From Selaginella moellendorffii (Eukaryota; Plantae; Lycopodiophyta): 64,000 nucleotides of DNA. Of the stretch, positions 7,477 to 60,600 are shown one piece after another. Position 1 is the stretch's first letter; the number at the start of each line of letters is the position of its first letter. Below the pieces are notes generated by a model. The model saw only the letters and a program-made list of their open reading frames with translations, made no database searches and had not been told where the DNA came from. The position numbers and the translations under genes were made by a program. The stretch lies in assembly GCF_000143415.4 (NCBI RefSeq), contig NW_003314269.1, positions 1,433,544 to 1,497,543 on the forward strand, read 5' to 3'.

Positions 7477-9969
7477 TCACAGCATCTTGTTGCGTTTCAT
7501 CACGTCCATCTTCATGAGCACGTCGTGCACGTCCGTCACCAGCTTGCTCTTCATCGAGTTGAAGTCCTGGAGCCCCTTCTCCAGCATCTGGTACTCCACA
7601 AAGCACCGCTTCCTCTTCTCCACCGCGTTGTTAACGTGGAGCTTGTACCCCTTGGCGACGTACTCCTCCTCCATCTTCTCGCTCTTGGCCAGCACGATCT
7701 TTCTCAGCCTCTCCGCCTCGAGCCGGGCCTCGTCGGCTCGCAGCTGGAACATCTTGGCTTCGGCCTGCTTTATGTGGATGGCGCTCTCCATCTCCTCGAT
7801 CTCGCTCCGCTTCCTCGCCCGGCTGTACTGCATCTCGGCAATCTCGTTCCTCTTGGCCTCGAGCTCCCGGTCGAGAATCTGCAAGTTACCGTTCCCAGAA
7901 CCACTCTTGCTCTTCGCCACCATTTCCTCCGCAGCATTCGCGTAGCTGCCGCTTCGAACTGCAACCGCACCCGCAGGAACTTCTCCACCTCCATGCTGCT
8001 GCTGCTGTTGCTGCTGCTGATGCTGCTGCTGATGCTGCACTTTGGCAGTCTCCAAATCGATCTTCCCCTCTGCAGCACAGCGTTTTCGTTAACGAAAATT
8101 AGGAAAAACAAGATTTTTACCTTGGAAGAACCGGACGATCGCCTCGCATAACTCGGAAGTGTCACCGCATCCCTCCACCTTGCCCAGCATTTTCTCGGCA
8201 ATCCAGCACAGCTGTTTCCCTCTAGAGTCCTGGCTGCGCCGAAATATCCTCTGGATACAGTCGAGCTCCTGCCGCAGAGTCTCGGCGCTCCAATCCTTGG
8301 CGTACGTCGTAAACACCTCCCGGACGAAGCCAAACAAGTCCGAGGCATGGCCGCAAGCCACGCACACGAACTGCATCTCCGACTGCTTTCCACCTTGAGC
8401 AGTCCCGGGCTTGATATACGACAGTCGGATCCCACAGTCGGTGTGGCACCAGTGGAGGCAAAAGTCGCAGCCAACCCAGCGGCAAGTGTTGGCCATGAAG
8501 TCGAACTTGGAGCAGGCGATGCACATACACCCGCTGCAAAATCCCTCCTTTTGTGAGCAAAACTGGCAGTCGCAGTCGTCGGTAGGGAGCTGGTTCTGGC
8601 ACGCGAAGTTGCGGCACCGCTTCTGGAGGAAAACCTCCACGAGAGCCGCGGTAGACATCCGGTTCTCGCAGAGAAGAAAAGCCTGGATGCCCGTTTTCAT
8701 CGCCACCAGGAGCTCCAGCTGCGTGCGGTGGGCAACGTAGAGGTTCTCGGCCGAGAGGTCGTTCCGCCGCTGGAGGATCCTTTGCAGCCGCAGGAACTCG
8801 TCCCGCTTCTCCACGCTGCCGAGCATCTCCGTGAGCGACTTCTTCAAGTCCTCGAGGAAGATATCCGGGAGCTCCTGGAGCTTGTTGGCCACCACCGCTA
8901 CGGGATCCGCCGCCACCTCGTACAGCCCCACACGGTTCTCTCCTTGGAGGGACCTCTCCTCGGCCGCCTTGTGCTTGCCCCGTCGCGTCCCAGCGTGCTT
9001 TCGAAAGCCCTCCTTGAGATCTGGGAACAAGGCGTGATACGGCTCCAAGTTGTAAGAGTTCCACTTGACGGGTGGTGGAACTTGGTGCTGGTGCTGGAAA
9101 CCGGCACTGTTGCTGCTCCTGGTGATGGTGGTGGTGGTGGTGGTGCCATTGTTGTTGTTGGTGGTGGTGGTGGCCACGTTGTTCTTGTGAGCAGCAGCAG
9201 CAGCAGCGAGAGCTCCACTGTCCGGAAAAGGATTCCTACTTCTCTGGATGATCCCCTGAGGACCGAAGAGACCACCGTGAGACACCGTCTCGTTCTCGTG
9301 CCCAGCAACGTACTGCGTCGCGCTGGAGTTGAGATCATCCAGCGAGTTGTGCGTGAGCGAGCAGCTGGGATTGTGGACGAAGGATCTAGTGTTGACGGTG
9401 GTGGTGTTCGAGATGGAGCGAACGCTCATCACCTTCCCACTCACCAGTGAAGCCGAGGGGGCGTTACACCCGGAAGATCCCAGTGACAGAGATATCTCTC
9501 CGCCACCACCACCACCACCACCGCCTCCTCCCAGCGAAGAAGACGGTTTCCTGGCCTTGATCGTCGTCTCCGGCGGGAAGAGCTTCTTACTTTCGCCAGC
9601 GCCCCAGCTCCCACCGAGCGTGAGCAGCAAATCATCCTTCGCTGGAGTAGCCATCGCCTTGTCCTTCGCTTCTAGCTTCTCGGGACTGCCGGAGCTCTTG
9701 GAGAGCACCACCACATCTTGGTCAGCTTCTTCTTTCTTCTCTTCCTCGCCCCTTTCCTCCTCCTCGCGATCGATCTCGTTCAAGTCGGGCTTGAGTGAAA
9801 CCGCGGGACTGCTCTCCTTCCGCGTGGACTTGTCAAATCCCCCCTCTTCTTTTTCCTCCTCGCGACTGTGCCTGTCCTCTTCAATGACTTCCCTCTTCTC
9901 CTCCTCCACTACGCCCTTTGCCTTCTCGGTGGCGACCCCACATTCTTCCTTGATCACGCTCTCCTCCAT
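7477..9969 (-). CDS. OBERON/TITANIA-like PHD-finger + coiled-coil protein (OBE3/4-type), 2 coding exons
   Basis: SFVHNPSCSLTHNS; CRNFACQNQLPTDDCDCQFC..FCSGCMCIACSKFD..CDFCLHWCHTDC; KQAEAKMFQLRADEAR..EAERL..EEEY; intron at 8070-8120. Confidence 0.92.
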
Positions 9970-10517
9970 ACCCAAGCCCTGATCGCTCGAAAACTAGCTC
10001 GCGCGGAGGAGAGCGAAAGGAGCGAGATCGATCCCTACCTCCTGGGGCGGCCTATGACATGAGATGATTGATCGCTGGAGCCGAGGCCGCGGAAATCGCG
10101 AGGTCGCTCGCTAGCTCATTGTCTCACATCCCAAAGCTCGTCGTCTGTCGCCAACGAATCATCTATGAGTGATCTTTGCCGGGCGCTCGACGAATCTCGA
10201 GAGCAGCCACGCCCCGCCGATCCCTTCGAGGCGAGCCAGCTACGCGCCACGCGGAGATCGCCGTCGTGCTCGTCACTTCCCCTGCTTTGCCCTAGATTCC
10301 TCCTCCCACGCTCTCCTGCTGACTCACTACTCAGCTGCCGATGTGGCAGTGCTTACTCAGCACTCACTGCGGTATGACATGGACAGTCTGGAAAGAATGT
10401 TCTCGGTCCTCTAAAATATTCTTTACTCTCGCGAAAAACTTACACACTCGCAAAGAACAAATTTTACAACATAGATCTCGTTTCGATCTCGCAAAGAATC
10501 TTTGGTCTTATCTTCTA

Positions 10518-22841: not shown

Positions 22842-24193
22842 GCTCCTAGGCTGCCGAATCGGTGTCCAAGCCAGCACGAGATGGAAAGCGAAGTAAAACT
22901 CCCTCTTTTCCTGCTGTGTTTCAAGCAGAAAAAGGAGCAAGGAGCGGGCTTAGCGAGAGGCCATCGCTGGAGCTGAGAAACCAATGCTATAGACGAATAA
23001 ACTTCCGGATCATGGAAGAAGAAAACTTTGGCTGCTCCGCTACAAATCTAGCAAGCCCATCTGGATCACCAGCGAGAAAGGATCGAGACAACCCACACCC
23101 GGCCGAGAGACGCAAGGAACAAAACACTCTTTCGTAGACAAGGCGTGAGAAGTGGGTTTATAAATGGAAGAGAAGAGCTAAAGAGAAGATTCGAAGTAGT
23201 GAAAGGAAAAAACGAAGAAGACCAAAGTATGAGTGTTCTTGCCTGGTAATGGAGGAAACGCGGATGACTCTGGTTTCAAGGTGGTGATTTTTCTCCACTT
23301 TTTCATTCTTTTTCTCTTGTTTTTTCGAATTTTTTTTTCTCTGTTGCTGCTGGCTCGCTGGCAGCCAGCCGTGTCCGATTTATAACTACGGCTGACCGCC
23401 CCCTGGAACACGGTTTGAATGTATGCGTATACGTAGATAGTGGTGACTGTCCGTCTTTCTCCTTGGATGCTCCCTCGTTTTCTCTTTCCTCGTTGTGATT
23501 GATGCCACCAAGTTTTGCCTTTCAAGTCGCGACTGTTCCTCGAGAAGAATTCATTGTTTTTCCTTTTGTTTGCCTGTGATTTGTATATCTTCCGGATCGC
23601 ACTAAGTTCTTACTTCTTAGCTACTTGATCCCGGATGATTGGAAGTTGACTTAGCAAAGAAAAGGATAAATCTCTGCTTGCTTGTGTCGGCGAGTTTTTA
23701 GTGATTTCTCCCCGGAGAGGAAACGCGGAGCGAGAATTTTCCAGGAGCGTCGACGTCTGTTTCTGCCAGTGAGAGATCGGTTCTAAAAACACCTCGTGCG
23801 CGCATGTGAAAAGGCCGGATTTTGAGCCATGCACAGAACACAAGTTCCAAGTTCTTCCTCATATCCCACTCTTTGTAGTCGAAAGAAAGAGAGAGTCAGA
23901 ACCAGAAGAACACCAACCACGAACCTTACAAAGCGTGAATTTAAGGGTGGCTTTGATGCGCTGCCACATGAGAGATCCAAGTTGTCGAGGAAAACGAACG
24001 AGATCCAGCTTGCTCTCCAGCATACGAACGACCTTCCACTGGAAACGGCGCAGGCTTTTTTTTTTCCCCTCTTTTTATTCGATCCTAGCAGTGGTGACTG
24101 TCGCTGCAGTCAAACACCGACGTGAGAAACATGTGAGCGCCCACAAAATCGCGTTTTTTCCTATCCGAAAGAATGACCAACCTCTAAATTTTG

Positions 24194-25530
24194 TCATTGT
24201 TGCTGCTCGAACGCTTCGTGATCTGTGAAAGTTATCAGTGTCTGTGAGACATGATCTTTGTAGTTTCTATCTGGAGAACCTGTATCACTTTTCGCTGAGA
24301 TGTGATTGTCTGTTGTTTGTTTGTCTGAGTGTGGATTTTGCTGCTTCTTCCTCTGGACGTGAACGATCGCTGGCGCCCAGCTCATTTTCATCTCTTGCCG
24401 TTGGACAAGTTCCCAGGAGCCACCAGAAAACCGCTTTGTAACGGAAATCACAACCGAGCCATTTCGCAGTGTCTGAGTAGCTCTTTGCTGGTGGAGAAAG
24501 TTAGGAGAGAATAATTCTCCTTTCCTTCTCCTCCTAAAGCAAAACATAAACATACCTCAAGCTGCTCGAATAATGGATCATCAAAACATGTTGCGTTCGC
24601 AAAAACAATGTCGGCGTCTGACCAGTCTTCCTGAAAATGGAAATGCCATTAATCCGCTTGAGAAAAAAACAATAAACATGAAACAGCACCTGGAGAAAGT
24701 CTCCTCGAACAAAACTGATGTCTTGATCGCGTCTGGAAGGATGCAAATAAGGGAGAACCTGCAAAACAGTCTCAAGTGAAGTATAAGTGTCCATACAAAC
24801 TTTTTTTTTTTTCTTCTTGAACCTCCAGTTTGTACAGCAGAAGCAGCTCCTGATTCATCTCGTGCATGCCTGACGAAACGAAACAACACATAAGAACTTT
24901 TGCATACAGCGAAAAAGCAGACAGACTTGGGATGATCTCGAGTCCACAAGATTTCACGCAGTCCGGCCGCAACATTGGAGCTAGAAACACAGGACGGCCA
25001 GCACCACATCCCAAGTCGTAGAACGCGAAGCCTTTCCTGGAGGAGTCCCCCATAGCCAGAGGCACACACAGCTCCAGCATCCTTGCAAAAGCTATAAAGC
25101 TTACCTGAGAGCGTCGAAGCAAAAAAGAAACAACACACCACTGTGGCGGAAGAACACAAAAAAGGAAGAAAAAACTGACTTCTCCATAGATGAGACACTT
25201 GGAAGTTTTAGGACTGTGCTGCTGTATCTCCATTGCTTTCCTACTCTCTACCTGGAAGATGATGATCCATCGCGTAGAACAAAACTAAGAGGAGACAGTG
25301 CGTACCCGCCAAACCGGCGCTGGATGATCCCGGTACAAGCTTTCAATCAGCTCAAACGCATCTTTCCTGCTCAGCTGCTCTTTGGCAACGCTGCTGCCAC
25401 AAGAAATGCTGCTGCTGCTGGCCGCTTTGGTGGGATCATCAGCGACACAAGTTTGGACATTTGCAGCGCAGCAAAGACGCGAGTGGATCGAAAGCCGGCG
25501 GCAGCAAGCGCGAATCTCCCCCTCACCCAT
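24194..25530 (-). CDS. DOT1-like class I SAM-dependent lysine methyltransferase (about 7 exons)
   Basis: Spliced product: LIYGE|VSF..FYDLGCGAGRPVF..CVKSCGLEIIP..FVRGDFLQ|EDWSDADIVFANATCFDDPLFEQLE|QRATQTLRNGSVVISVTKRF..MSW. The first intron was checked in phase (exon 1 25530-25306, exon 2 from 25251). Confidence 0.72.
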
Positions 25531-25806
25531 TGCCCTAGCCACCAAGTTGCCAAGAATTAAAAGCTGGTATCGTTCAAGAGTGTCAAACTATGAGAATAAA
25601 TTGAAAAAGGAAGATTACAAGCTTCATTCAACAAGTTTTTCAGCTGGACTGCGTTTCAGATGAACTTATCCCTGACCTGGAAAAGTTTTGCAAGAGTTAA
25701 CCAGATGCGCGCATGAATACAGTTGTTCCAAGGTATTCAAAATTGAATTGTTCTCATTGGCAAAGTGTGAGGCGTGCACAATATACAAATACATGATAGA
25801 GGACCT

Positions 25807-26183
25807 TTATTCAAGAGCTTGATACGTTGTGTAGAAGCAACATTCCTGGGACGCAACAGGTTTTCAGGCAGTAAAAAATGCATTGACCTGCATGGATGGA
25901 GCAACTGCCCGTTCCGACCATCGGTTCTCTTGGTCACTTTCCATTCCCATGACCACAACCTGCAAATTTTATCAATAGTGTATTTCCCAGATAACATACT
26001 CACTTACGTGGCGCTGCAAGATGAACGTGAGTCATCTTAATACTGTCAGATTTGCTGTTCTTGGAAAGTTGTTCTTGAATCAAAATCACCTGCCAGTCAA
26101 GGGATGTGTCAACTAAAAAGAAGAAGTGATCATACCTTCTCTGTTCCTTTCATAACAAAATACCATGCATGGAGAGTGCATTT
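25807..26183 (-). pseudogene. Degenerate internal fragment of RNA polymerase III second-largest subunit (NRPC2/RPC2) with introns
   Basis: KCTLHAWYFVMKGTEK|VILIQEQLSKN, VVVMGMESDQE, EC..YTTYQALE* resemble RPC2 (CPLDPGGYF.VKGTEKVILIQEQLSKN, MGMESDQE, QALEY); premature TAA. Confidence 0.7.
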
Positions 26184-26404
26184 GTGGAGACCCTGTGGTG
26201 CATTTTCTTTGAATGAGCAGCAAATCAAGATTTCCCTCAGGAATGGACTTTAAACTGTGTGGTTCCCATCTATAAATCTGAGATCCTATGGTCCCAGAAA
26301 ATTACCCGACCATTATAGTGAACTCTATCTTCTCCAAGTTATTTATAACTATTCTAGAGCATCACCTTGTCTCTTGGAGTGAGACCAACTCCAAATGAAT
26401 TGAA

Positions 26405-26548
26405 CCGAACACCCTAAATAATGCATGTATCAAATGTTGAATTTCTCTCTCTTTAACTTGATGTAAATAACACTTCATTTCAAACACCCTAAATAATGCA
26501 TGTACCAGATGTCAAATTCCCTCTCTCTCTCTCTCTCTAGAGAGAGAG
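26405..26548. repeat. ~74-bp tandem duplication ending in a (CT)n-(AG)n palindrome
   Basis: aacaccctaaataatgcatgta occurs twice (~26408 and ~26483); ctctctctct...ctagagagagag at 26521-26548. Confidence 0.7.
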
Positions 26549-27005: not shown

Positions 27006-30000
27006 CTACACATGCATAATCTCCGGAGGATCAGCCTGCTGAACGTCATGCCGAACCTCATAAACTTGTGGTCCAACTTGCCGTAACACCCGATACAGTC
27101 CTTTCCACTGCGCAAGGAGCCCCTTAGATAAACCATGTACCGTAAGATGGGGAAAACGGATTAACACCAAATCATCCACTTTGTACTCCGCAGGTGGACG
27201 ATGATGGGAATTGTAGCGCCGTTGTTGTCCCACTTGTACACGGCCTAAGTGTTCAGCAGACTCTGCTCGGACAAGTGGAAGAAAGCTTGTCAAATATTGA
27301 TCCCATGACCTAGCATCAGGAGCTCGTGGCAATCGTGAAGGTAAACCCAGCTCTGTTGGTAATATTGGATCATGATCATATAGAAGTTTATATGGTGAAG
27401 CACCAACAGAACTCTGCACCCCTGTGACATAGGCATACTGAAGAGATGGCAAATAACCATCCCAATCCGAATGTTGAAAGTTCACATACTTCGCAATCAT
27501 CCCTTTGAATGTCTGAACGAGCCGTTCCACCAGACCGTCTGATTGTGGATGATAAGCACTCGTAAAAGTGTGGCGTATCCCCAACCGAGATGTCAAAACA
27601 TGAAATACCTCAGCCATAAATGCAAGACCATTATCTGAAAGAATCCACTCTGGACAAGAATGCTGGAACACCACTCGATTGAGGAGGAAGTATCCATCAG
27701 CAGTTGCAGAGGCACTAGCAAGAGCACCAACTTCCACCCAACGAGTCAAGTAGTCAGAAGCAATAATAACATACTCATTGCCAGCAGTCGATCGTGGAAA
27801 AGGTCCCATAAGATCAAACGCCACTAACTCAAACGGACGGGAAACTGTAATTGACTCCAACCGTCCTTCCGCAGCACAAGGGGGAGTATTACGAGCTTGG
27901 CACCAAACGCAGCTACGCACATACCAGATAATATCACGTCGCATCTCTGGCCAATAGAAAGACCTGTGCAGCTTCTCGGTGACACGACGGTGTCCCATAT
28001 GCCCACCTAGAATAGGAGAATCATGGTAGGCATGGAGAAACCGCGGAATAAACACCGAAGGCACCACCAGCCGTAAATGATCATTAGGATCCGTCCCCAT
28101 AAAATAAAGAAGGCCATCTTTAAGGCGATATTGAGAATGTAAATGCCGGAAAGGCAAGTCATCAGTAAGTGATGCAGGATTCTCAAACCCATCTCGAAGC
28201 CTTCAAATCCACGGCTCAATCTTTTGAGCCTCGCGAACCTCATCAAGAGAAGGTAGATCTTGCTCTGCGCCCTGTGGACACTGAACGTCAAGGACAGCAA
28301 CCACTGACGGCATAGAATCCTCATCTAGAAAATCCACAGATGCTGGAACAACAGGTTCGTTAGAAACATGAGAAGTGAGTGGAGAAGGAAGAAGAGCTCG
28401 AGAAAGGGCATCAGTATCAGCCATAGAACTCCTTGGGCGATGAACAACATCGAAATCATATATCTGAAGCTTCAAAGCCCATCGAGCCGTACGACCAACC
28501 AGGTTCTTCCGTTTCAATAATGAAGTAACAGCAGCATGGTCACCTTCAAGTAACGTCCGAGAACCATGTAGATATGCATGAAGTTTCTCGAAACCCCAGA
28601 CTGCTGCTAAACACTCCTTCTCCGTCGTGGAGTAGTTCATCTCCGCTGGTTGTAATGTACGGCTTATGTATGCAATGGGATGGCGCTGACCAGGCACACT
28701 CGAGCTCTCTTGCATCAACACACCTCCAAGACCAATGTCAGAAGCATCCACGCGCAAAATAAAAAATCGAGTGTAGTCAGGATATGCCAAAACCAGAGGA
28801 GTTGTCAATAGCTCTTTGAGATCCACGAATGCCCGCTCACAATCCGGAGACCAGATGAAAGATGACGTTGATGACTTCAGCAACGCTCGCAATGGTGTAG
28901 TGCGATCGGAAAGATGATTCACAAAACGACCAAGATACTGCACCTTACCCAAAAAGCGCTGCACATCATTCACACACTTTGGAGTAGGGAACTTTAGAAC
29001 AGCCACAAGTTTGTCAGGATCAACTTGCAAACCCTCACGAGAAATACGGTACCCAAGATAAGTTGTGTCCTTGGACCCAAACACACACTTTGACCGCTTC
29101 ATCTTTAAACCAACATCGCGTAGCCAATCCAACACTTTACAAACATCACGAACGTGCTCCTCCCACGTCCCCTCCGAGTGGATCAAGACATCATCAATGA
29201 AGTCAGCCGTCACCTCCGGCATATCGCAAAGAACCTCGTCCATCATCCGTTGAAAAGTTGCTGGAGCATTGTTCAAACCAAACGGCATCACCAAGAACTC
29301 GTACAAACCAAATGGTGTACGAAAAGCAGTCTTAGGAATATCGTCTTCGGCCATCGGTACTTGCCAATACCCAGAAGCAAGATCTAGCTTGGTGAACCAA
29401 TGACTTCGCCCTAGACGATCTAAGAGATCAGCAGTGTGAGGAAGAGGGTACACATCCGGGATCGTCACTTCATTTAACGGACGATAGTCGATGCAAAAAC
29501 GAATACTCCCATCAGGCTTCGTCACAAGATGAGGTTCACATGCCCAAGGACTCCGCGACTTCCGAATAACACCCTTCTCCAACATCTCCTTGACGTTTGC
29601 ACGTAAAATCTTGATCTCCTTGGGTGACCGATGACGAACAAGAACCTTGATTGAACGAGCATCCCCGGTTGGAATGGGATGACGTGTGGCAATCTTGGCC
29701 CCAGACGATAGGTCAAATTCAAAGAGATCAGAATACTCCTTCATGAGCTGGTCAACAGTTGCAACACAAAGATCATCGGAGGGATCGGAAAAGGGAAGAG
29801 CAGAACAAGATGGAAACACAAGAGGAAATAGTGGGGGAACAAAAGTAATGGAAGTAGAGGTAGAAGTAGAGGGACGAAAAGGTACGGAAGTGAAAGGAAT
29901 GGATGAAACATAAGGAAGTATGAGACAAGAAGGAGAAGCCTCAAAGTCACACTTGGCATGATTGCGTTGCAACCAATCCATACCAAGAATGAAGTCAAAA

Positions 30001-30356
30001 GCTTGACTCAGCACCACCCGCAACGACTGCAACTCAAGCTCGAGATCGCCCACATGCACAACCAGGTCTGCCTCATCTCGTGCACATGCATGTGTATGGC
30101 CGTTGCCATAAAGAATGAAAACTGGATCCGCCGCATGACGCAAGTGTAGACGACAACGTGTGGCAACAGGTCGAGCAATAGAAGATAAACTCGAACCTGT
30201 ATCAACTAACACGGAGAGAAGAATAGAAGACCTCTTGTTATAAAAATGAGCTTGGAAAGTAAACACTGGATGAATCGGTGCCGAGTGAACCCCTTGATAA
30301 TACTCCCGAAAGAAAGATGGAGGGGTCACTAACTTATTCGCGCAAGGTCCCTCCAT
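27006..30356 (-). pseudogene. pol: Pol (protease, RT, RNase H, integrase) in the -1 frame relative to gag; in-frame TGA at 28203
   Basis: LVDTGS, RFCIDYRPLN, LDLASGYWQ, MPFGLNNAPATFQ, FIDD, VDASDIG, H..GH..C..C, SDNG..YHPQSDGLVER; the two ORFs share a frame across one stop codon. Confidence 0.92.
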
Positions 30357-31288
30357 TACTCGCGCGACTCCTCGTTTCCCGAATGCACCTCGGTATCCAA
30401 ACCTTCCACCGTAGCAACACCAATGGGACGTTGCTTACGCCAAGGTCTCCACCCAGGAAATGGAGGTCGCCAATCCGAAAAGCGCCGACAACGCCGATAA
30501 GTATGACCAACTTCATCACACGCCCAACAACGAACATCACGGCCACGACCACGTCCTCGCCCTTGTCCTTGGACTCGAGTAGCAGCAGCATCAACCTCCA
30601 TGGTAATAGGACCATCACTCATAGGAAGTAGAGCTGAAGGACGTGTAGCAAGAAGTGGAAGAGGCGACATCTCATAACGTTGTGCCAAGCGAAGAGCATC
30701 GTCAAGAGTGGCAGGAGCAAGTGCATGCACAAGTCCGACAAGATCTTGACGAAGTGCTGGCCACAACATTCCTAGCTTGATCCGCTCCAACATATTTGGC
30801 TCCGCACGAAGCAAAAGACTTCGGAAACAAACGCCAAATTGCATCACCGACTTAAATGGCCCTTGGCAAAAACGATGCAATTGTTGGAAGGCATCATCAC
30901 AATCGTCGGCGTGGCTGAAGGCGCGTTTGAAGACGTCCGGAAGAACACTCCAATCGCCACAAGTGGCTATGCTCAATCCATTGTACCACTGCAAAGCCGT
31001 CCCTTGGAGACATGTGGGGAACTCACGCAAACGTCGAGCATCATCCCAAGAATGATATGTGGCAATCACTGTGAAGTGATCGAACCAATGGTACACATCA
31101 TCCCCAGGATTCCCACGAAATAACTCCGGCCAAACACGAGGATTGGCACCAAAAGCAAGAGGAGTTGTACCATGTGCCGTGAATGCCGCCATCAACTGAG
31201 TTTGGTTGTTCAATTGCAAGCACATAGCATCAAGCAATTGAACTAGCTGCTGCTCTAGAGTCAAAGGAGGAGATTGCGGATCGGCCAT
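30356..31288 (-). CDS. gag: Gag with CCHC zinc knuckle
   Basis: PELFRG..WFDHF, LQGTALQWY, CWACDEVGHTYRRC. Confidence 0.9.
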   Translation of the reverse strand: MADPQSPPLTLEQQLVQLLDAMCLQLNNQTQLMAAFTAHGTTPLAFGANPRVWPELFRGNPGDDVYHWFDHFTVIATYHSWDDARRLREFPTCLQGTALQWYNGLSIATCGDWSVLPDVFKRAFSHADDCDDAFQQLHRFCQGPFKSVMQFGVCFRSLLLRAEPNMLERIKLGMLWPALRQDLVGLVHALAPATLDDALRLAQRYEMSPLPLLATRPSALLPMSDGPITMEVDAAATRVQGQGRGRGRGRDVRCWACDEVGHTYRRCRRFSDWRPPFPGWRPWRKQRPIGVATVEGLDTEVHSGNEESRE

Positions 31289-36959: not shown

Positions 36960-38312
36960 ATTTTTAGAGTCAACACTGTAACAAAGACCTCACACAACTA
37001 AACAACTCAAATGAGCTCTCTGGGCTCTCCTTGCCAAATTTACCTCCAATCACAATTTGTTTTGGAATCCTTGGCATGTTCTCCGGCAGCTCTGCCACAT
37101 CATCTGTCCAATGAATGTGAATCACCTCTTTCCTCACTAAGCCCCCAATCAAGGAGAGTGCTCTTGCACCTGTACTTCCTTTCCATGTGCATGAAAATGA
37201 CTTTTGCCTCCACCTGAATATCCTCCTCTCAAGCTTCATGATGGTATCCGTGTACGAGTTCTTTTTCAGTCTATAGATTAAAGACCTGGATGACGAGCCA
37301 CAAGATCAAAAAACTCTTGCTTTGAACATGGTGCTTTTTCTGGTTGAACAATGTCCCACTGTATACTGTCTGCAGGATCACGAATTTGGTAAGCCAAGTA
37401 CAGGCCAACCCCAAAATCGAACTTACTCGGTGGTGAAGGCAACTGGAGCTGCATGTGATGGAGGTCATCACTCAACCATGTGTGGTGTGGTACGATATCA
37501 CCTAGCGTGAAAGGTGCACCTGCAAAATACAAGGATGAGGTGCGAAATGGGAAGTATGCTTACCGTTATTCAATAGCGTTTTCAGCCGAATCATAAACGC
37601 AAATTCAAGCACGTCCGCATCCTCCTTGTTGATGAAGTCAAGGGCGGCCATAGATCCCTTAATTCGCTGCCAGATAAGTGTGTCACGCAGTAAGCTACCA
37701 GGGGCAGGAACCTGACACGGAACTGCAGCAAATTTGGCGTCACAGCACCAGACACCTTGCGTGCTTTTCTTAGTGGACGATCTCGCTCTGCTTGAATCAA
37801 ACCGACTATGCCTTGTCCTTCAAGATCACCCCAAGTGTCATCACTGCCGTCCCACACTTTCTCCCCTCGTGTCACAGGAACTCCGAGTTGAGAAGTGTAG
37901 ATGGCCTGGAGTATCAAGCGCGTTTTGCCTTTGTTGTAGTCAGTTCTTAAGTACTGACTGCTAAACAGGGTCCATGCGTTGTCAAGCATGCTCCTTACTT
38001 TCCTTTTATCCAATCCCTCCTGCAGCTCCCTGTTCAGTTCATGTAGACTAATAGACCGTGGGAGCTCTGTCACCAGAGAGTTGATAAGGAATGAGAGCAT
38101 TCTCGGATTACTGCCCGCAATGCCGATCACCTTCTTCCACTCATCTGTAAGCATGACACGAGGCCCCTGGTTTTTCACCACCCTGCCAAAGAATATCTGG
38201 GCCACGTCATTCATGTCGTCAATTGTCAAAGGTGGCAGAGGAATATGTCAACAATTAGTTGTAGGACTCAATGAGGACACCCATAATACCACAGTGGTAC
38301 TATTTTTATTTT
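36960..38312 (-). pseudogene. Crinkler/RHS-like (NTPase C-terminal part + putative PD-(D/E)xK REase) gene relic, 5' part missing
   Basis: HIPLPPLT..AGSNPRML, AIY..PVTRG..TWGDLEGQGIVGL, FFDLV..IFMHMERKY; several in-frame stops and frameshifts; a splice acceptor near 38313 and an intron at ~37520-37563. Confidence 0.45.
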
Positions 38313-38450
38313 CTGCAAGAAAAGAATTTTAGTTAATGAAACTAACAAAAGGTATAAAAAAAATCAAACAATTGTTTTCAAATAAAAAGACAAAAAAGGT
38401 GGTAGGCAAGAGTTGGACCTCAAACAGTTTTAGGGTCTCGGGGCTTGAGG

Positions 38451-41308
38451 TTATTTGAATAACCTTGGCCAGTTAAAGTCCGAAGCATCCGTTTCTACCT
38501 CAAAGTCCTTACCAAAGTTTGGCAATGCCAACACGGGAGCCTTCCTCAACTTCCCTTTGAGGTGGACGAATGTCACCTCGCATTCTGCTGTCCATACCAT
38601 CTTCCCTTTTAGGGCTACTCTCGAATAGTGTCTGATAAACTTTCGGTAATAGTTGCATAGCCCCAAGAATGCCCTCAACTCATGTACATTTGATGGTCGC
38701 TCCCATTCCTGGATCGCTTGGACCTTCTCCGGGTCCACTTTGAGCCCGTCCTGGCCCACCATATGCCCAAGAAACTTTACCTCTTGTTGAGCAAAGTCAC
38801 ATTTGCTTTCTTTAGCATACAATTTGTGTTCCCTTAGTTTCTCAAACACCTTCGCCAAGTGTTCAGCATGCTCCTCTAGTGTTTCGCTATAGATCAGGAT
38901 GTCGTCAATATTGACGACCACGAAGTGATCCAAATAGGGTACAAAGATGTGGTTCATCAGTGGCGAAAACGTTGCCGGTGCATTGCATAGCCCGAAGGGC
39001 ATCACCAGAAACTCAAAGCTCCCATACCTCGTCCGACAGGTTGTCTTCTCGACATCTTCCTCGGCTACCCTGATCTGGTAGTATCCTGACCTTAGGTCAA
39101 TCCTCAAGAAGTATTTTGCCTTTCCCAACCTATTGAACAGGTCCTCAATCCTTGGCAAAAGGTACTTGTTCTTCTTTGTATACTTGTTGAGCAATCGGTA
39201 GTCTATGCACATGTGCATAGATCCATCTTTCTTTTTCACAAATAACACTGGCGCCCCATACGGCGACTTGCCCAACCTAACATACCCTTTGTCCACCAAC
39301 TCCTCTAGTTGGCACTTGAGCTCCTTGAGTTTTTTTTCGTTCAAACGATAGGGGGGACGAACCACCGCCTCAGCACCCTCGACCAGCTCAATCTTATGTT
39401 CTATCGGTCGTGCGGGGGGCAACCCCGCCGGTAGCTCCTCCGGCATGGTATCCTGGAATTGGTCTAACACCCGCTGGATCACTAAAGGTACTTCTTCTGT
39501 TCCTATCTTTTTGTCACTCTTCACCAAGAGTAAGCACAAAAAGGCTGTCTTAGTTCCTTTAGTGAGTTGTCATCTCGTGGACACCAGGTTTAAGCAGGAA
39601 TCTTTGGCCTTGCTTTGCCCTATCTTTAGATCTTGGGCCTCCACCCTAGATCTTCTTCCTTGGGCATTCGCTAGTACCACAAGGTTCATACCTTGTCCAT
39701 GCAGAGCTACCACGAACCGATTGAACCAATCCATTCCGAAGATCACGTCAAATCCCACCATGTCCAACACGGTGAAATGCATGTCTACTTTCCATGTCCC
39801 TACTTCGACTCTCGCTTGTCGAAGTACCTCATTGGTGTTTTGGCTACCTTGAACAAACTCTATAGTCCTTGGTTCTCCTAGCCGCTGCACTGTTAGTCCG
39901 GCTTGCCGGACTATGTCTGCAGCCACAAAATTATCCGAAGCACCCGTGTTAATAAAGATCTTAACAAAGCTACCTCCGAGCTTCCCTCGAAGGGCCAGTA
40001 TATGTCGCGAACGACTCTTTACCAAAGTTGCTCGTGTAATGAGTAACTTTGAGTTAGGGACTGGATCACATACCTCAGTTTGGACTTCACCCGACTTGAC
40101 GGCCATATTGGCTCTGGCCTTCTTCGGGTAGGGACATTCCTTTAAAAAGTGTCCCGCTTCACCACAGTTGTAGCATACATTGTTTCCCACGCTGCTACAT
40201 GACTTGACCTTCTTATCCATGGGTTTATCTCTTTTCGCTTGACTCCCCCACATACTCGCTCGCTGGCCACCGGATTTGCCTTTCCGGAGCCCCGAGGGCT
40301 CATTCTTAGAGAAACTCTTCTTGAATTTCCCTCTGTTATACGTTCCTCTTGGTTTGGCCCCTTTGCTAAACATGGATCCCGACCCCGTCGTGTTCCCCTT
40401 TCGCAGGTTATCGTTGAAATGCACCTTGATGGCCGCATCCAACGCTTCCTTGTAATTGGTCGGGTTCCACCGCATCACCTCACCACGAGCCTAGGTTTGC
40501 AAACCTGATATGAAGGCATGGAACGCATCCATATCCCCCATGTCCGTGACTAGTATCCTCTTTGCCATAAACCCATTCACATACTCCTGAATGGTTCCGG
40601 TTTGCTTCAGCCTACTCAGCTCGTCCCTTAGATGCAGGGTAGCATTCGGAGGAACGTATGTTGCGCGGATCCTCGCCTTCATCATGTCCCAAGTGGCCAC
40701 CGGTCCTTCGTTGGCCTCTGTTGTTCTCCACCAAGACTTGGCATTATCTGTGCCAATTGTCCTTCTAAAACGTCCAATCGAGCCTTGGACGACCGAACCT
40801 CACCACCGGACTCCTGTTTGGAAGTTTCCTCATTGGAGTCCTCCTCATGCAAGGATTCTTCATCCATAGCCTCTTGTTCGACCGGAGGCTCCAGCTCTAG
40901 AGGAGGTTCCGTCCCTGCCTTGGTTCACTTTCGCCCTGCCTTTGCCATCTCCTAGCAATCTGCCTCTATCCTTCGCTAGAACTGAGGAAAAGGCTCCAAT
41001 ACCAAATTGTAAGCCACAAATTTTTCCTTTCCAATTTGCCAGCTTACCTCGTCTATCCGACCATGGCTTGTGCTAAGTTCCCTCGCCAAGGTTCCCGCCT
41101 ATTGTACCAGCTCCTACTTGGTCCTACTTGGTTTTAGCTACTCACTGCACGAGCAACAGAGTGTTAGCCATCCATCTACGGATTCCTAAATCTCTCATAA
41201 TCCCCCTCCCCCGGGTTAGACTGGACTTAAGGTTTGGCTACACTCCCCACAGGCACAAGCAGCCAAACACACCAAGCCTCCAGGTTCCTAACACCCCTTG
41301 GTACAACA
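38451..41308 (-). mobile_element. Second Ty3/gypsy element (Tf2/chromovirus-like RT), truncated inside RNase H, with mutated catalytic motifs
   Basis: CYNCGEAGHFLKEC; INTGA (protease D>N); [16 protein letters not shown]; IDLRSGYYQ; NIDD (Y>N); ETDASD followed by the break. PBS TGGTATTGGAGC at 40993-41004; LTR from 41008, far end approximate. Confidence 0.85.
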
Positions 41309-59133: not shown

Positions 59134-60600
59134 TCATGGCTTCCTGACCTCCCCAGACTTGGTCACGAACCTGGCTGCGCTCCTCATGGTCACAAACTCC
59201 TCCGCAGCGGTGGGATGAATCCCCACCGTGGAGTCGAACTGCGCCTTGGTGGCGCCGCCCTTGAGCGCCACACCAATCCCCTGCATGATCTCGGGGGCGT
59301 CCGGCCCACACATCGCAACCCCCAGCACTCGATCATCGCCCGTGTCCACCAGCAGCTTCATCACCGACTTCTCCTGCCTCCCGGATATGGTGTTCTTCAT
59401 GGGCGTGAAGCTGGAGCTATACACCGCCACCTCCCCCTTGGCGGCCTTCACCGCCTCCTCCTCGGACAGCCCCACCACCGCCAGCGGCGGCTGGCAAAAC
59501 ACCGCCCGCGCAACGTTCTCGTGGTCGGGCTTGGTCGCCTGCCCGCCAAACGCCGTCTTTGCGAAGCACGTCCCCTCCATGAGTGCCACCGGCGTGAGAT
59601 TGATCCTGTTGGTCACGTCCCCGATCGCCCAGATGCTGGGAACGCTGCTGCGCGAGTACTCGTCCACCTTGATCGCTCCCGACTTGTCCAGCTCCACGCC
59701 CAGCTCCTCCAGATTCAAGCCGCTCGTCTTGGGCTTCCTCCCCACCGCGAAGAGCACCGCGTCGGTTATGATCTCGCCACCGTTGTCAATCGAGACCTTG
59801 AGCTCGCCGCCAACTTTCTCGATCTTGGTCACGTTGGTATCCGGGCGGAGATGGACGCCCCGGTTCTCCAAGTTCCTGGCCACCACGGCGCGCATCTCGT
59901 CGTCGAATCCACGCAGCGGCGTCTTCTTCCTGAAGAGGAGCTCCACTTTGCTCCCCATCCCGGAGTAGATCCCCGCGAACTCCACCGCGATGTAGCCGCC
60001 GCCGACGATCACGCAGCGCCGCGGGAGCTCGTCCAGATTGAGCCCCTCGTCCGAGGTGATGGCCAGCTCCTTCCCCGGGACGTTCAAGCGGACCGCGCGG
60101 CTCCCAGTCGCGACGAGGATGTGCTTGGCGCGGTACCTCTTGCTGGAGCCATCGCTGTGAGAGACCTCCACAGTGTGATCATCCACCAAGCTCGCTCTTC
60201 CCTCGAGGATCGTCACCCCGGACCCGGTGAGCAGCCTCTTGTAGATCCCGTTGAGCCTCTCGATCTCTCTGTCCTTGTTGGCGATCAATCGCTTCCACTC
60301 GAAGGTGATGCCGTCGGGGACGTTCCAGCCAAAGTTCTTGGAGTCCTGGAACTCGGCGCTAAACATGGAGGCGTAGACGAGGATCTTCTTGGGGACGCAG
60401 CCGCGGATGACGCACGTCCCTCCCACGCCGCCGGCGCTCTCCGAGCTTACGTGCGCGAATGGGAGCTCAACCACGGCTACCTTGGCGCCGAAATTCGCCG
60501 CGGTGCGGGACGCGCGGACTCCGCCGCTACCAGCGCCGATGGTGAAGAGATCGAAATCAAACGCCTCCTCCGGCGCCGCGGTGGCGCCATTCTCTGCCAT
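59134..60600 (-). CDS. GR: Glutathione reductase, cytosolic type, intronless
   Basis: [69 protein letters not shown]; uninterrupted 488-aa ORF; no transit peptide. Confidence 0.97.

What the first reader, a model, noticed from the sequence alone, without database searches (positions are those of the whole stretch)
24194..25530. Intact-looking DOT1-like methyltransferase in a land plant
Seen: splicing at canonical sites gives a compact protein with DOT1 motifs in order: YGE, FYDLGCGAG, GLE, RGDFL, D..IVFAN..F, L..GS.VIS..K.F and a terminal SW (human DOT1L: YGE, FVDLGSGVG, GVE, RGDFL, VIFVNNFAF, EGGRIVSSKPF, VSW). Established: DOT1 enzymes are non-SET H3K79 methyltransferases, and DOT1/H3K79me is generally reported absent from flowering plants. 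Inference: this lineage may retain an H3K79 or non-histone lysine methylation system lost in angiosperms. The Cys/Ser-rich N-terminal extension could be an organelle transit peptide, which would point to a non-histone substrate.
Basis: partly seen in the sequence, partly recalled or inferred. Interest (0 to 1): 0.8.

Follow-up and report, generated by a model that had tools for sequence, protein, structure and literature searches.

The report
Short DOT1-like methyltransferase gene, Selaginella
This is a real, expressed and spliced gene of the lycophyte Selaginella moellendorffii for a small DOT1-fold lysine methyltransferase; it is already in the databases and literature as the "Dot1" that flowering plants lost, but its closest characterised relative is a Legionella enzyme that methylates non-histone nuclear proteins, not histone H3K79.

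Summary
Orthologue conservation supports the other two.

The organism is Selaginella moellendorffii. The gene is SELMODRAFT_408223, and its allele is SELMODRAFT_402649. Both public models are wrong: each has a false N-terminal extension and keeps the tail intron, and the 408223 model also keeps the 57-nt one.

Pfam DOT1 is the best family (44.5 bits against a cut-off of 23). All top fold matches are DOT1 enzymes.

Named orthologues occur in liverworts, a moss, lycophytes and a fern. None was found in seed plants. This presence in Selaginella and loss in angiosperms was already published in 2016 (PMC4822149).

What is added here: the protein belongs to a short, catalytic-domain-only subfamily. 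Its nearest solved relative is Legionella LpDot1 (PDB 9NE1; profile E 2.5e-42, Z 25). LpDot1 does not methylate histones and targets SFPQ.

Like LpDot1, the plant protein lacks DOT1L's nucleosome loop, ubiquitin helix, a conserved F131-type aromatic and any basic region. A non-histone substrate is therefore more likely than H3K79. The transit-peptide idea is not supported. The scan also noted the same kind of gene on another piece of this genome.

The parts
25306..25530 (-). Coding exon 1 (aa 1-75): start ATG 25530; conserved N-terminal helix motif RRLSIHSRL (aa 11-19); LYRDHP (aa 65-70)
   Evidence: The motif is conserved in orthologues. RNA contig 25197-25535.
25180..25251 (-). Coding exon 2 (aa 76-99), ends with the YGE motif
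   Evidence: GT-AG borders. Junctions supported by orthologue conservation, not by a listed RNA junction.
24927..25104 (-). Coding exon 3 (aa 100-158): SAM-binding motif I FYDLGCGAG and post-I GLE
   Evidence: The downstream junction 24927/24869 is seen in an RNA contig and a read.
24870..24926 (-).
   Evidence: Junction in the X1 contig and an X10 read. Its absence from allele model P0001 is shown.
24823..24869 (-). Coding exon 4 (aa 159-174)
24690..24758 (-). Coding exon 5 (aa 175-197) with RGDFL
24556..24630 (-). Coding exon 6 (aa 198-222) with DWSDAD and IVFANATCF. The Asn aligns with DOT1L N241.
24280..24487 (-). Coding exon 7 (aa 223-291): strand GSVVIS, C-terminal beta-hairpin with MSW, VHVQRKK, then an unconserved tail
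24223..24279 (-). 57-nt in-frame intron in the C-terminal tail
   Evidence: Junction in the X1 contig and an X11 read. The aligner displaced it because of a 1-nt A-run difference.
24194..24222 (-). Coding exon 8 (aa 292-300) and stop codon TGA 24196-24194
24104..24181 (-). 78-nt intron in the 3'UTR, 12 nt after the stop
   Evidence: Junction 24103/24182 with GT-AG ends in the X1 contig
23500..24103 (-). Probable long 3'UTR: minus-strand RNA coverage and no long ORF
   Evidence: X1 contigs overlap at 24056-24076. All X10 reads have the first mate on the + strand. ORF list.

Best explanation
The locus is the Selaginella moellendorffii gene SELMODRAFT_408223. It has eight coding exons and encodes a 300-aa SAM-dependent protein-lysine methyltransferase of the DOT1 fold.

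[quoted passage not shown] This subfamily is found in green-lineage organisms from algae to ferns, in many protists and giant viruses, and, by horizontal transfer, in Legionella as LpDot1.

The SAM-binding and catalytic motifs are intact, so the protein is most likely an active enzyme. It lacks the elements that DOT1L uses to dock on a ubiquitinated nucleosome, as LpDot1 does. Its substrate is therefore more likely one or more non-histone proteins than nucleosomal H3K79.

Shown here: the gene structure, its transcription, family and subfamily membership, the fold, and the phyletic pattern among the proteins found. Inferred: catalytic activity and the substrate class.
For: - Gene model: five introns are confirmed by RNA junctions, and the read strand fits a minus-strand RNA.
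- Identity: the window protein is identical to P0013 in the shared parts and 98% identical to allele P0001.
- Constraint: the alleles differ by 1.7% in exons against 3.4% in introns, with 7 synonymous and 7 non-synonymous changes. The non-synonymous ones lie in linkers or are conservative.
- Family: Pfam DOT1 is the best family at 44.5 bits, E 1.7e-11, against a cut-off of 23.
- Subfamily: the family profile scores 148 bits (E 2.5e-42) against 9NE1 over its whole length, 57 bits against DOT1L, 54 against yeast Dot1p and 37 against TbDOT1A.
- Fold: the AF2 model has pLDDT 80.5. Foldseek gives 9NE1 a target TM-score of 0.85, followed by Dot1p and DOT1L. VIA-align gives Z 25.1 for 9NE1, about 22 for DOT1L, about 19 for Dot1p and TbDOT1A, and about 15-16 for generic methyltransferases.
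- Conserved residues: Y97 G98 E99, D129, G131, G133, G135, E155, W200, D204 and F213 are invariant in the family. The Asn aligns with DOT1L N241.
- LpDot1 biochemistry: it shows no activity on histones, methylates SFPQ K518 and RNA-processing proteins, and lacks the DOT1L loop 273-286, the helix 319-331 and F131.
- Shared absences: the plant protein aligns without gaps to LpDot1 from strand IVISV to the end. Residues after 279 are disordered. The core pI is 6.3 and the tail is acidic.
- Vertical descent: land-plant sequences form a clade with 100/99 support, joined at 96/95 support by a sequence from a JGI sample of unknown organism and a cluster from marine eukaryote-like contigs.
Against: - No biochemical data exist for any plant or algal member.
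- Trypanosome DOT1A and DOT1B are also compact and lack the ubiquitin-dependent elements, yet they methylate nucleosomal H3K76 (cited). Compactness alone therefore does not exclude histone activity.
- W305 and N241 of DOT1L are conserved here.
- LpDot1 is a bacterial effector that may have been re-targeted after transfer, so its substrates need not reflect those of its eukaryotic relatives. SFPQ-type DBHS proteins are, to my knowledge, not found in plants.
- The equivalence to F131 lies in a loop of variable length and is uncertain.
- The tools could not take the window's own spliced protein. The allele P0001:74-392 stood in for it.
Confidence: 0.6

Rival explanations
1. It is a genuine histone H3K79 methyltransferase. 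On this view it is a minimal DOT1 that writes H3K79me on chromatin in free-sporing land plants, and the mark and its writer were lost in seed plants.
For: - Pfam DOT1 is above its threshold.
- DOT1L and Dot1p are the next-best folds after LpDot1, at Z about 19-22.
- The YGE, motif I, GDF, Asn (N241) and Trp (W305) equivalents are conserved.
- Compact trypanosome DOT1 enzymes work on nucleosomes without the ubiquitin elements.
- UniProt names the protein automatically as H3K79-specific.
- PMC4822149 counts it as Dot1/Dot1L.
Against: - The closest characterised relative has no histone activity.
- The acidic-patch loop, the ubiquitin helix and a conserved F131-type aromatic are all absent.
- The core is near neutral, the tail is acidic, and there is no Lys-rich region.
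- The profile score to DOT1L is 57 bits against 148 bits to LpDot1.
- The Pfam match covers only positions 21-167 of 205.
Confidence: 0.2
2. It is an organelle-targeted methyltransferase. The N-terminal Cys/Ser-rich extension would be a transit peptide, and the substrate a plastid or mitochondrial protein.
For: The first 50 residues are mildly basic (pI 8.3) and rich in Ser and Cys. There is no other support.
Against: - Residues 3-28 are predicted as a confident helix.
- They carry the motif RRLSIHSRL, which is conserved in the land-plant orthologues with a complete N-terminal model (Diphasiastrum, Adiantum, liverworts) and, in weaker form, in P0006; it is absent from the Ceratodon model.
- In Marchantia and Calypogeia the motif is internal, behind about 60-75 acidic residues.
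- Glu is present at positions 3 and 5.
- The minimal 218-aa algal-type relatives lack the extension altogether.
- No targeting predictor could be run.
Confidence: 0.05
3. It is a decaying or non-functional remnant, either a pseudogene or an annotation artefact.
For: - Expression is low, at about 1-2x depth in 12% of the RNA runs.
- One RNA contig retains intron 1, which would bring a stop codon.
- The two haplotypes differ by a frameshifting 1-nt indel in the tail.
Against: - The reading frame is open across eight exons in both haplotypes, and all catalytic motifs are intact.
- The indel affects only the unconserved tail after residue 287.
- Exons diverge half as fast as introns.
- Identity to liverwort, fern and lycophyte orthologues is about 50% after more than 400 million years (the time estimate is my own knowledge).
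Confidence: 0.03

Closest known systems
LpDot1 of Legionella pneumophila (lpp3025; PDB 9NE1; bioRxiv 10.64898/2026.01.11.698932)
   Same: Both have a catalytic-domain-only DOT1 fold. They are collinear over the whole length (profile positions 52-268 against chain residues 27-226, 148 bits; Z 25.1, rmsd 2.2 A, 198 of 203 residues aligned; 28-29% identity). Loop lengths after the last core strand are the same. Both lack the DOT1L nucleosome loop and ubiquitin helix, and both have a small residue where DOT1L has F131.
   Different: LpDot1 is a bacterial effector of 227 aa, acquired from a protist, that acts in the host nucleus on SFPQ K518. The plant protein is an endogenous nuclear-encoded gene. 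It has an extra conserved N-terminal helix (aa 3-28), a linker and an unconserved tail. Its substrates are unknown.
Human DOT1L and yeast Dot1p (H3K79 methyltransferases; e.g. PDB 1NW3, 6NJ9, 1U2Z, 7K6P)
   Same: Same fold and Pfam family. They share the YGE loop, D-x-G-x-G-x-G, the post-I Glu, GDF, the Asn of VNN (N241) and the Trp of the SW hairpin (W305).
   Different: Identity is only 17-22% and the profile score 54-57 bits. About 50 fewer residues span the aligned range. The protein has no loop 273-286, no helix 319-331, no conserved F131 aromatic, no Lys-rich nucleosome or DNA-binding region and no long regulatory C-terminus.
Trypanosoma brucei DOT1A/DOT1B (H3K76 methyltransferases; PDB 8FJM)
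   Same: These are also compact DOT1 enzymes of about 250-300 aa without the ubiquitin-dependent elements. Z is 18.8.
   Different: They are more distant in sequence (profile score 37 bits, 16% identity). Their histone activity has been demonstrated, whereas nothing has been tested for the plant protein.
Crenarchaeal aKMT / aKMT4 (PDB 5FA8, 5FAD, 5JWJ)
   Same: A DOT1-related minimal protein-lysine methyltransferase core. Z is 17.5-18.1 and the profile E-value is 1e-8.
   Different: It is about 160 aa long and lacks the N-terminal helical part with the YGE loop that the plant protein shares with the DOT1 enzymes.

Membership tests
DOT1 domain family (Pfam PF08123) | Score above Pfam's gathering threshold, and the best-scoring family | tested here: met
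   P0001:74-392, the allele 98% identical to the window's product, scores 44.5 bits (E 1.7e-11) against a cut-off of 23. The next family, Methyltransf_31, scores 26.5, below its cut-off of 27. All 9 other relatives scanned also pass. Single exons alone do not pass: 15.3 bits.
DOT1 domain family (Pfam PF08123) | DOT1-type fold: a class I methyltransferase core with an N-terminal helical part and a C-terminal beta-hairpin | tested here: met
   The AF2 model has pLDDT 80.5. The top 50 Foldseek hits are all DOT1 enzymes or aKMT. VIA-align Z is 25-19 for DOT1 enzymes against about 15-16 for other methyltransferases.
DOT1 domain family (Pfam PF08123) | SAM-binding and catalytic motifs: YGE, D-x-G-x-G-x-G, post-I Glu, GDF, Asn equivalent to DOT1L N241 | tested here: met
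   Positions 97-99, 129-135, 155, 193-195 and 209. Y97, G98, E99, D129, G131, G133, G135 and E155 are invariant in 36 family members.
Canonical nucleosomal H3K79 methyltransferase (Dot1p/DOT1L type) | Nucleosome acidic-patch loop (DOT1L 273-286) | tested here: not met
   Only 8 residues lie between strands 234-238 and 247-256. This region aligns without gaps to LpDot1, and the LpDot1 authors show that LpDot1 lacks the loop.
Canonical nucleosomal H3K79 methyltransferase (Dot1p/DOT1L type) | C-terminal helix that binds H2B-ubiquitin (DOT1L 319-331) | tested here: not met
   After the hairpin (aa 261-269) the chain is unconserved. From residue 280 it is predicted disordered, with pLDDT below 50. 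Marchantia orthologues end right after the hairpin.
Canonical nucleosomal H3K79 methyltransferase (Dot1p/DOT1L type) | Aromatic residue equivalent to DOT1L F131 before the YGE loop | tested here: inconclusive
   No conserved aromatic is present in the variable segment before LIYGE in the land-plant orthologues. By simple counting, Ser stands at position -5. The loop varies in length, so the equivalence is uncertain.
Canonical nucleosomal H3K79 methyltransferase (Dot1p/DOT1L type) | Basic, Lys-rich region for nucleosome or DNA binding | tested here: not met
   Whole protein pI 6.15, core pI 6.26, tail pI 4.8. There is no Lys/Arg cluster beyond RKK at 268-270. That DOT1L and Dot1p require such a region is my own knowledge (Min et al. 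2003; Sawada et al. 2004).
Canonical nucleosomal H3K79 methyltransferase (Dot1p/DOT1L type) | Methylation of H3K79 on nucleosomes | not testable with these tools
   This needs an enzyme assay or histone mass spectrometry.
Short, catalytic-domain-only DOT1-like proteins (LpDot1 type) | Collinear homology to LpDot1 over its whole length, scoring above the canonical DOT1 enzymes | tested here: met
   The profile scores 148.3 bits (E 2.5e-42), covering residues 27-226 of 227, against 57.8 bits for DOT1L. The single sequence gives E 1.1e-19 against 3e-4. Z is 25.1 against 22.4.
Short, catalytic-domain-only DOT1-like proteins (LpDot1 type) | No accessory domains | tested here: met
   Pfam finds only DOT1 and generic methyltransferase models. 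Outside residues 51-270 there is only an N-terminal helix, a linker and a disordered tail.
Short, catalytic-domain-only DOT1-like proteins (LpDot1 type) | Non-histone substrate | not testable with these tools
   This is known only for LpDot1. No eukaryotic member has been characterised, as far as the papers searched show.

The most novel reading that the evidence does not exclude
This minimal DOT1-fold enzyme could still be the writer of H3K79 methylation in free-sporing land plants (bryophytes, lycophytes, ferns). It would dock on nucleosomes in a way unlike DOT1L and independent of ubiquitin, as the trypanosome enzymes do. Seed plants would then have lost an entire histone mark together with its writer.
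Probability: 0.15. Interest if true: 0.7.

Novelty: already known. Interest (0 to 1): 0.3.

Why it matters
The gene itself is not a discovery. It has been in GenBank and UniProt since the Selaginella genome was released, and a 2016 paper already used it to argue that angiosperms lost Dot1.

Two things are useful here. First, the corrected gene model: 300 aa in eight exons, without the false N-terminus and retained introns of the public models. Second, the family assignment: the automatic name "H3 lysine-79 specific" is probably misleading.

The plant protein belongs with the short DOT1-like proteins. The only characterised member of that group, Legionella LpDot1, methylates RNA-processing proteins rather than histones. 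Marchantia has an orthologue and is easy to manipulate genetically. It would therefore be a good system for finding the native function of the eukaryotic family that Legionella borrowed, and for settling whether non-seed plants have H3K79 methylation at all.

Tried and rejected
1. RNA junctions show two more in-frame introns.
2. Pfam on single exons gave only a sub-threshold DOT1 hit. The word-index search with a 143-aa read-through piece found nothing because of the length window. The exhaustive representative search with the same piece then found the family.
3. The spliced window protein has no reference, so I did not type it into any tool. The allele P0001:74-392 and P0013 stood in for it. 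Comparisons with the window product were done in scripts.
4. The N-terminal extension of the public models was rejected. There is no RNA coverage at 25536-26024, and the reads at 26055-26162 run on into unlike sequence at both ends.
5. A link with flagellate sperm was considered, because the named plant hits are all free-sporing. It was dropped: it was not testable here, and the LpDot1 paper reports a short isoform in Acanthamoeba, which to my knowledge has no flagellate stage.
6. A paper search for 9NE1 and one for Mp4g21560 found nothing. One broad paper search was uninformative.
7. Cluster look-ups gave no names for the unnamed relatives. The organism of the marine contigs carrying the 218-aa relative was not determined.
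8. No tree including canonical DOT1 sequences could be built, because none were available as session proteins. Subfamily placement rests on profile scores and structure scores.

Full report
**Observation**

The finding lies on the minus strand. Reading 25530 down to 24194 gives an ATG at 25530 and a TGA at 24196-24194.

RNA data corrected it. I laid two raw stranded RNA-seq runs and two sets of run contigs on 23500-26500.

- The junctions confirm introns 24822-24759, 24689-24631 and 24555-24488.
- They reveal two more in-frame 57-nt introns, 24926-24870 and 24279-24223.
- They also show a 78-nt intron in the 3'UTR, 24181-24104.
- All reads of the stranded runs have the first mate on the + strand, which fits a minus-strand RNA.
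- Introns 1 (25305-25252) and 2 (25179-25105) are not shown by a listed junction. One contig, 25197-25535, retains intron 1.
- Both splices are nevertheless required to keep the motifs LYRDHPxxVWR-xxSRKAM and LIYGE-VSFIAF contiguous, as they are in every orthologue.

The final coding model has eight exons and gives 300 aa.

**Identity of the locus**

An exhaustive phmmer search with a read-through piece (exon 2 to exon 4) found 12 proteins, the best at 95% identity. The word-index search named them.

- The window's product is identical, in all shared parts, to SELMODRAFT_408223 of Selaginella moellendorffii (P0013). It is 98% identical to the allele SELMODRAFT_402649 (P0001) on scaffold GL377565.1.
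- Both public models carry a false N-terminal extension built from ORF pieces at about 25860-26230. RNA coverage stops at about 25535. The reads at 26055-26162 run on into unlike sequence at both ends, so they come from a similar gene elsewhere.
- Both public models also keep the 57-nt tail intron, and P0013 keeps the 57-nt intron at 24926-24870 as well.
- The rest of the window fits a plant genome: an Oberon-type PHD gene, Ty3/gypsy elements and a glutathione reductase.

**Evidence that the gene is under constraint**

The two haplotypes differ at 1.7% of exon positions against 3.4% of intron positions. There are 7 synonymous and 7 non-synonymous changes. The non-synonymous ones lie in the N-terminal linker or variable loops, or are conservative.

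A 1-nt A-run indel at 24289-24292 shifts the frame only in the unconserved tail after residue 287. The RNA contigs carry the other haplotype's variants.

Orthologues at 46-51% identity exist in Marchantia polymorpha and M. paleacea, Calypogeia, Ceratodon, Diphasiastrum and Adiantum. In a maximum-likelihood tree the land-plant sequences form a clade with 100/99 support. At 96/95 support they join a sequence from a JGI sample of unknown organism (P0006) and a 218-aa cluster from compact eukaryote-like marine contigs.

**Family**

- Pfam DOT1 (PF08123) is the best family for the allele: 44.5 bits, E 1.7e-11, cut-off 23. It covers profile positions 21-167 of 205. Generic methyltransferase models fall below their cut-offs.
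- An AlphaFold2 model built on a 36-sequence alignment has mean pLDDT 80.5.
- Foldseek against the PDB returns only DOT1 enzymes and the archaeal aKMT among the top 50.
- VIA-align gives Z 25.1 for 9NE1, about 22 for human DOT1L, about 19 for yeast Dot1p and TbDOT1A, 18 for aKMT, and 15-16 for unrelated class I methyltransferases.
- YGE, D-x-G-x-G-x-G, the post-I Glu and F213 are invariant in the family, and the Trp of the C-terminal SW is nearly so. The Asp-Phe of RGDFL is kept in most land-plant orthologues.
- The Asn in IVFANATCF aligns with DOT1L N241.

Membership of the DOT1 superfamily is therefore secure, and the enzyme looks catalytically competent.

**Subfamily and likely substrate class**

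The family profile matches PDB 9NE1 over that protein's whole length (residues 27-226 of 227) at 148 bits, E 2.5e-42. DOT1L scores 57 bits, Dot1p 54 and TbDOT1A 37, over the central core only.

9NE1 is LpDot1 of Legionella pneumophila. Its authors report the following.

- It has no activity on histones.
- It methylates nuclear non-histone proteins, notably SFPQ K518.
- It lacks DOT1L's loop 273-286 and helix 319-331, which contact H2A/H2B and ubiquitin.
- It has Ala where DOT1L has F131.
- It was acquired from a protist that carries a short, catalytic-domain-only DOT1-like protein. Close eukaryotic relatives include ciliates and a volvocine alga.

The Selaginella protein shares these absences.

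- It aligns without gaps to LpDot1 from the last core strand to the end of the hairpin.
- Only 8 residues lie where DOT1L has its long loop.
- It is unconserved after the hairpin and predicted disordered from residue 280.
- It has no conserved aromatic before the YGE loop.
- It is near neutral, with core pI 6.3, an acidic tail and no Lys-rich region.

By the defining features of a nucleosomal H3K79 methyltransferase, three are not met, one is inconclusive, and the activity itself cannot be tested here. I therefore place the protein in the short LpDot1-type subfamily and consider a non-histone protein substrate more likely than H3K79. The compact trypanosome DOT1 enzymes, which do act on nucleosomes, keep the histone reading open at about one in five.

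**Transit peptide**

Residues 3-28 are predicted as a confident helix with pLDDT 82-89. They carry the motif R-x-C-x-R-x-LSIHSRL, which is conserved in the land-plant orthologues whose models have a complete N-terminus (Diphasiastrum, Adiantum, the liverworts) and, more weakly, in P0006. The Ceratodon model lacks it. In Marchantia and Calypogeia it lies behind about 60-75 mostly acidic residues. The minimal algal-type relatives lack the extension. This is a conserved structural or regulatory element, not a cleavable presequence. I could not run a targeting predictor.

**Distribution and prior knowledge**

Neither the single-sequence nor the profile search of 5.8 billion proteins returned a seed-plant protein. 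Named hits are liverworts, a moss, lycophytes, a fern and a ciliate. The word index limits sensitivity, so this is good but not absolute evidence of absence.

The Atlas places the protein nearest to small DOT1-domain clusters of oomycetes, diatoms, haptophytes, euglenozoans and giant viruses.

The central claim of the finding is already published. Gu et al. 2016 (PMC4822149) found no Dot1/Dot1L gene in five angiosperms, found it in S. moellendorffii, and concluded that angiosperms lost it. UniProt already names both Selaginella proteins "Histone-lysine N-methyltransferase, H3 lysine-79 specific". The scan itself holds a similar first-stage note on another piece of this genome, probably the other haplotype.

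**Verdict**

- Supported, but already known: a real DOT1-family gene retained in a free-sporing plant and missing from flowering plants.
- Not supported: the H3K79 function.
- Favoured: the non-histone alternative.
- Rejected: the transit peptide.

Novelty is low for the gene and moderate for the re-classification. Interest is 0.3.

Noticed in passing
window 26055-26162: About 108 nt are covered deeply by RNA reads in three runs, but every read runs on into unlike sequence at both ends. This looks like a fragment similar to a highly expressed gene located elsewhere. Public gene models wrongly fuse ORF pieces from about 25860-26230 to the DOT1-like gene as an N-terminal extension.
   Followed up: partly
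window 27006-31288 (minus strand): An intact-looking Ty3/gypsy retrotransposon: gag ORF 30356-31288, protease-RT-RNaseH ORF 28203-30356 and integrase ORF 27006-28157. A second, more broken copy lies at about 37591-40478.
   Followed up: no
window 8089-9975 (minus strand): A single 628-aa ORF with an Oberon-type PHD finger (PF07227, E 5e-39). This plant-specific chromatin reader supports the plant origin of the window.
   Followed up: no
window 59134-60600 (minus strand): An uninterrupted 488-aa ORF for glutathione reductase (TIGR01424, 684 bits). An intron-less copy is unusual for a plant GR gene and may be a retrogene.
   Followed up: no
window 25474-25512 (aa 7-19 of the product); alignment A1 columns 76-100: The motif R-x-C-x-R-x-LSIHSRL is conserved in the land-plant orthologues with a complete N-terminal model and is predicted helical. 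The RRLS core resembles a basophilic-kinase phosphorylation site. Its function is unknown.
   Followed up: partly
window 24289-24292: The two Selaginella haplotypes differ by one A in this run. The difference shifts the reading frame only in the unconserved C-terminal tail after residue 287. The RNA contigs carry the shorter run.
   Followed up: yes
L001 3903-4559 and L002 1423-2079 (TARA ocean contigs): A minimal 218-aa member of the same family sits on compact, intron-poor, eukaryote-like marine contigs next to hexokinase and a C2H2 zinc-finger gene. The organism was not determined.
   Followed up: partly
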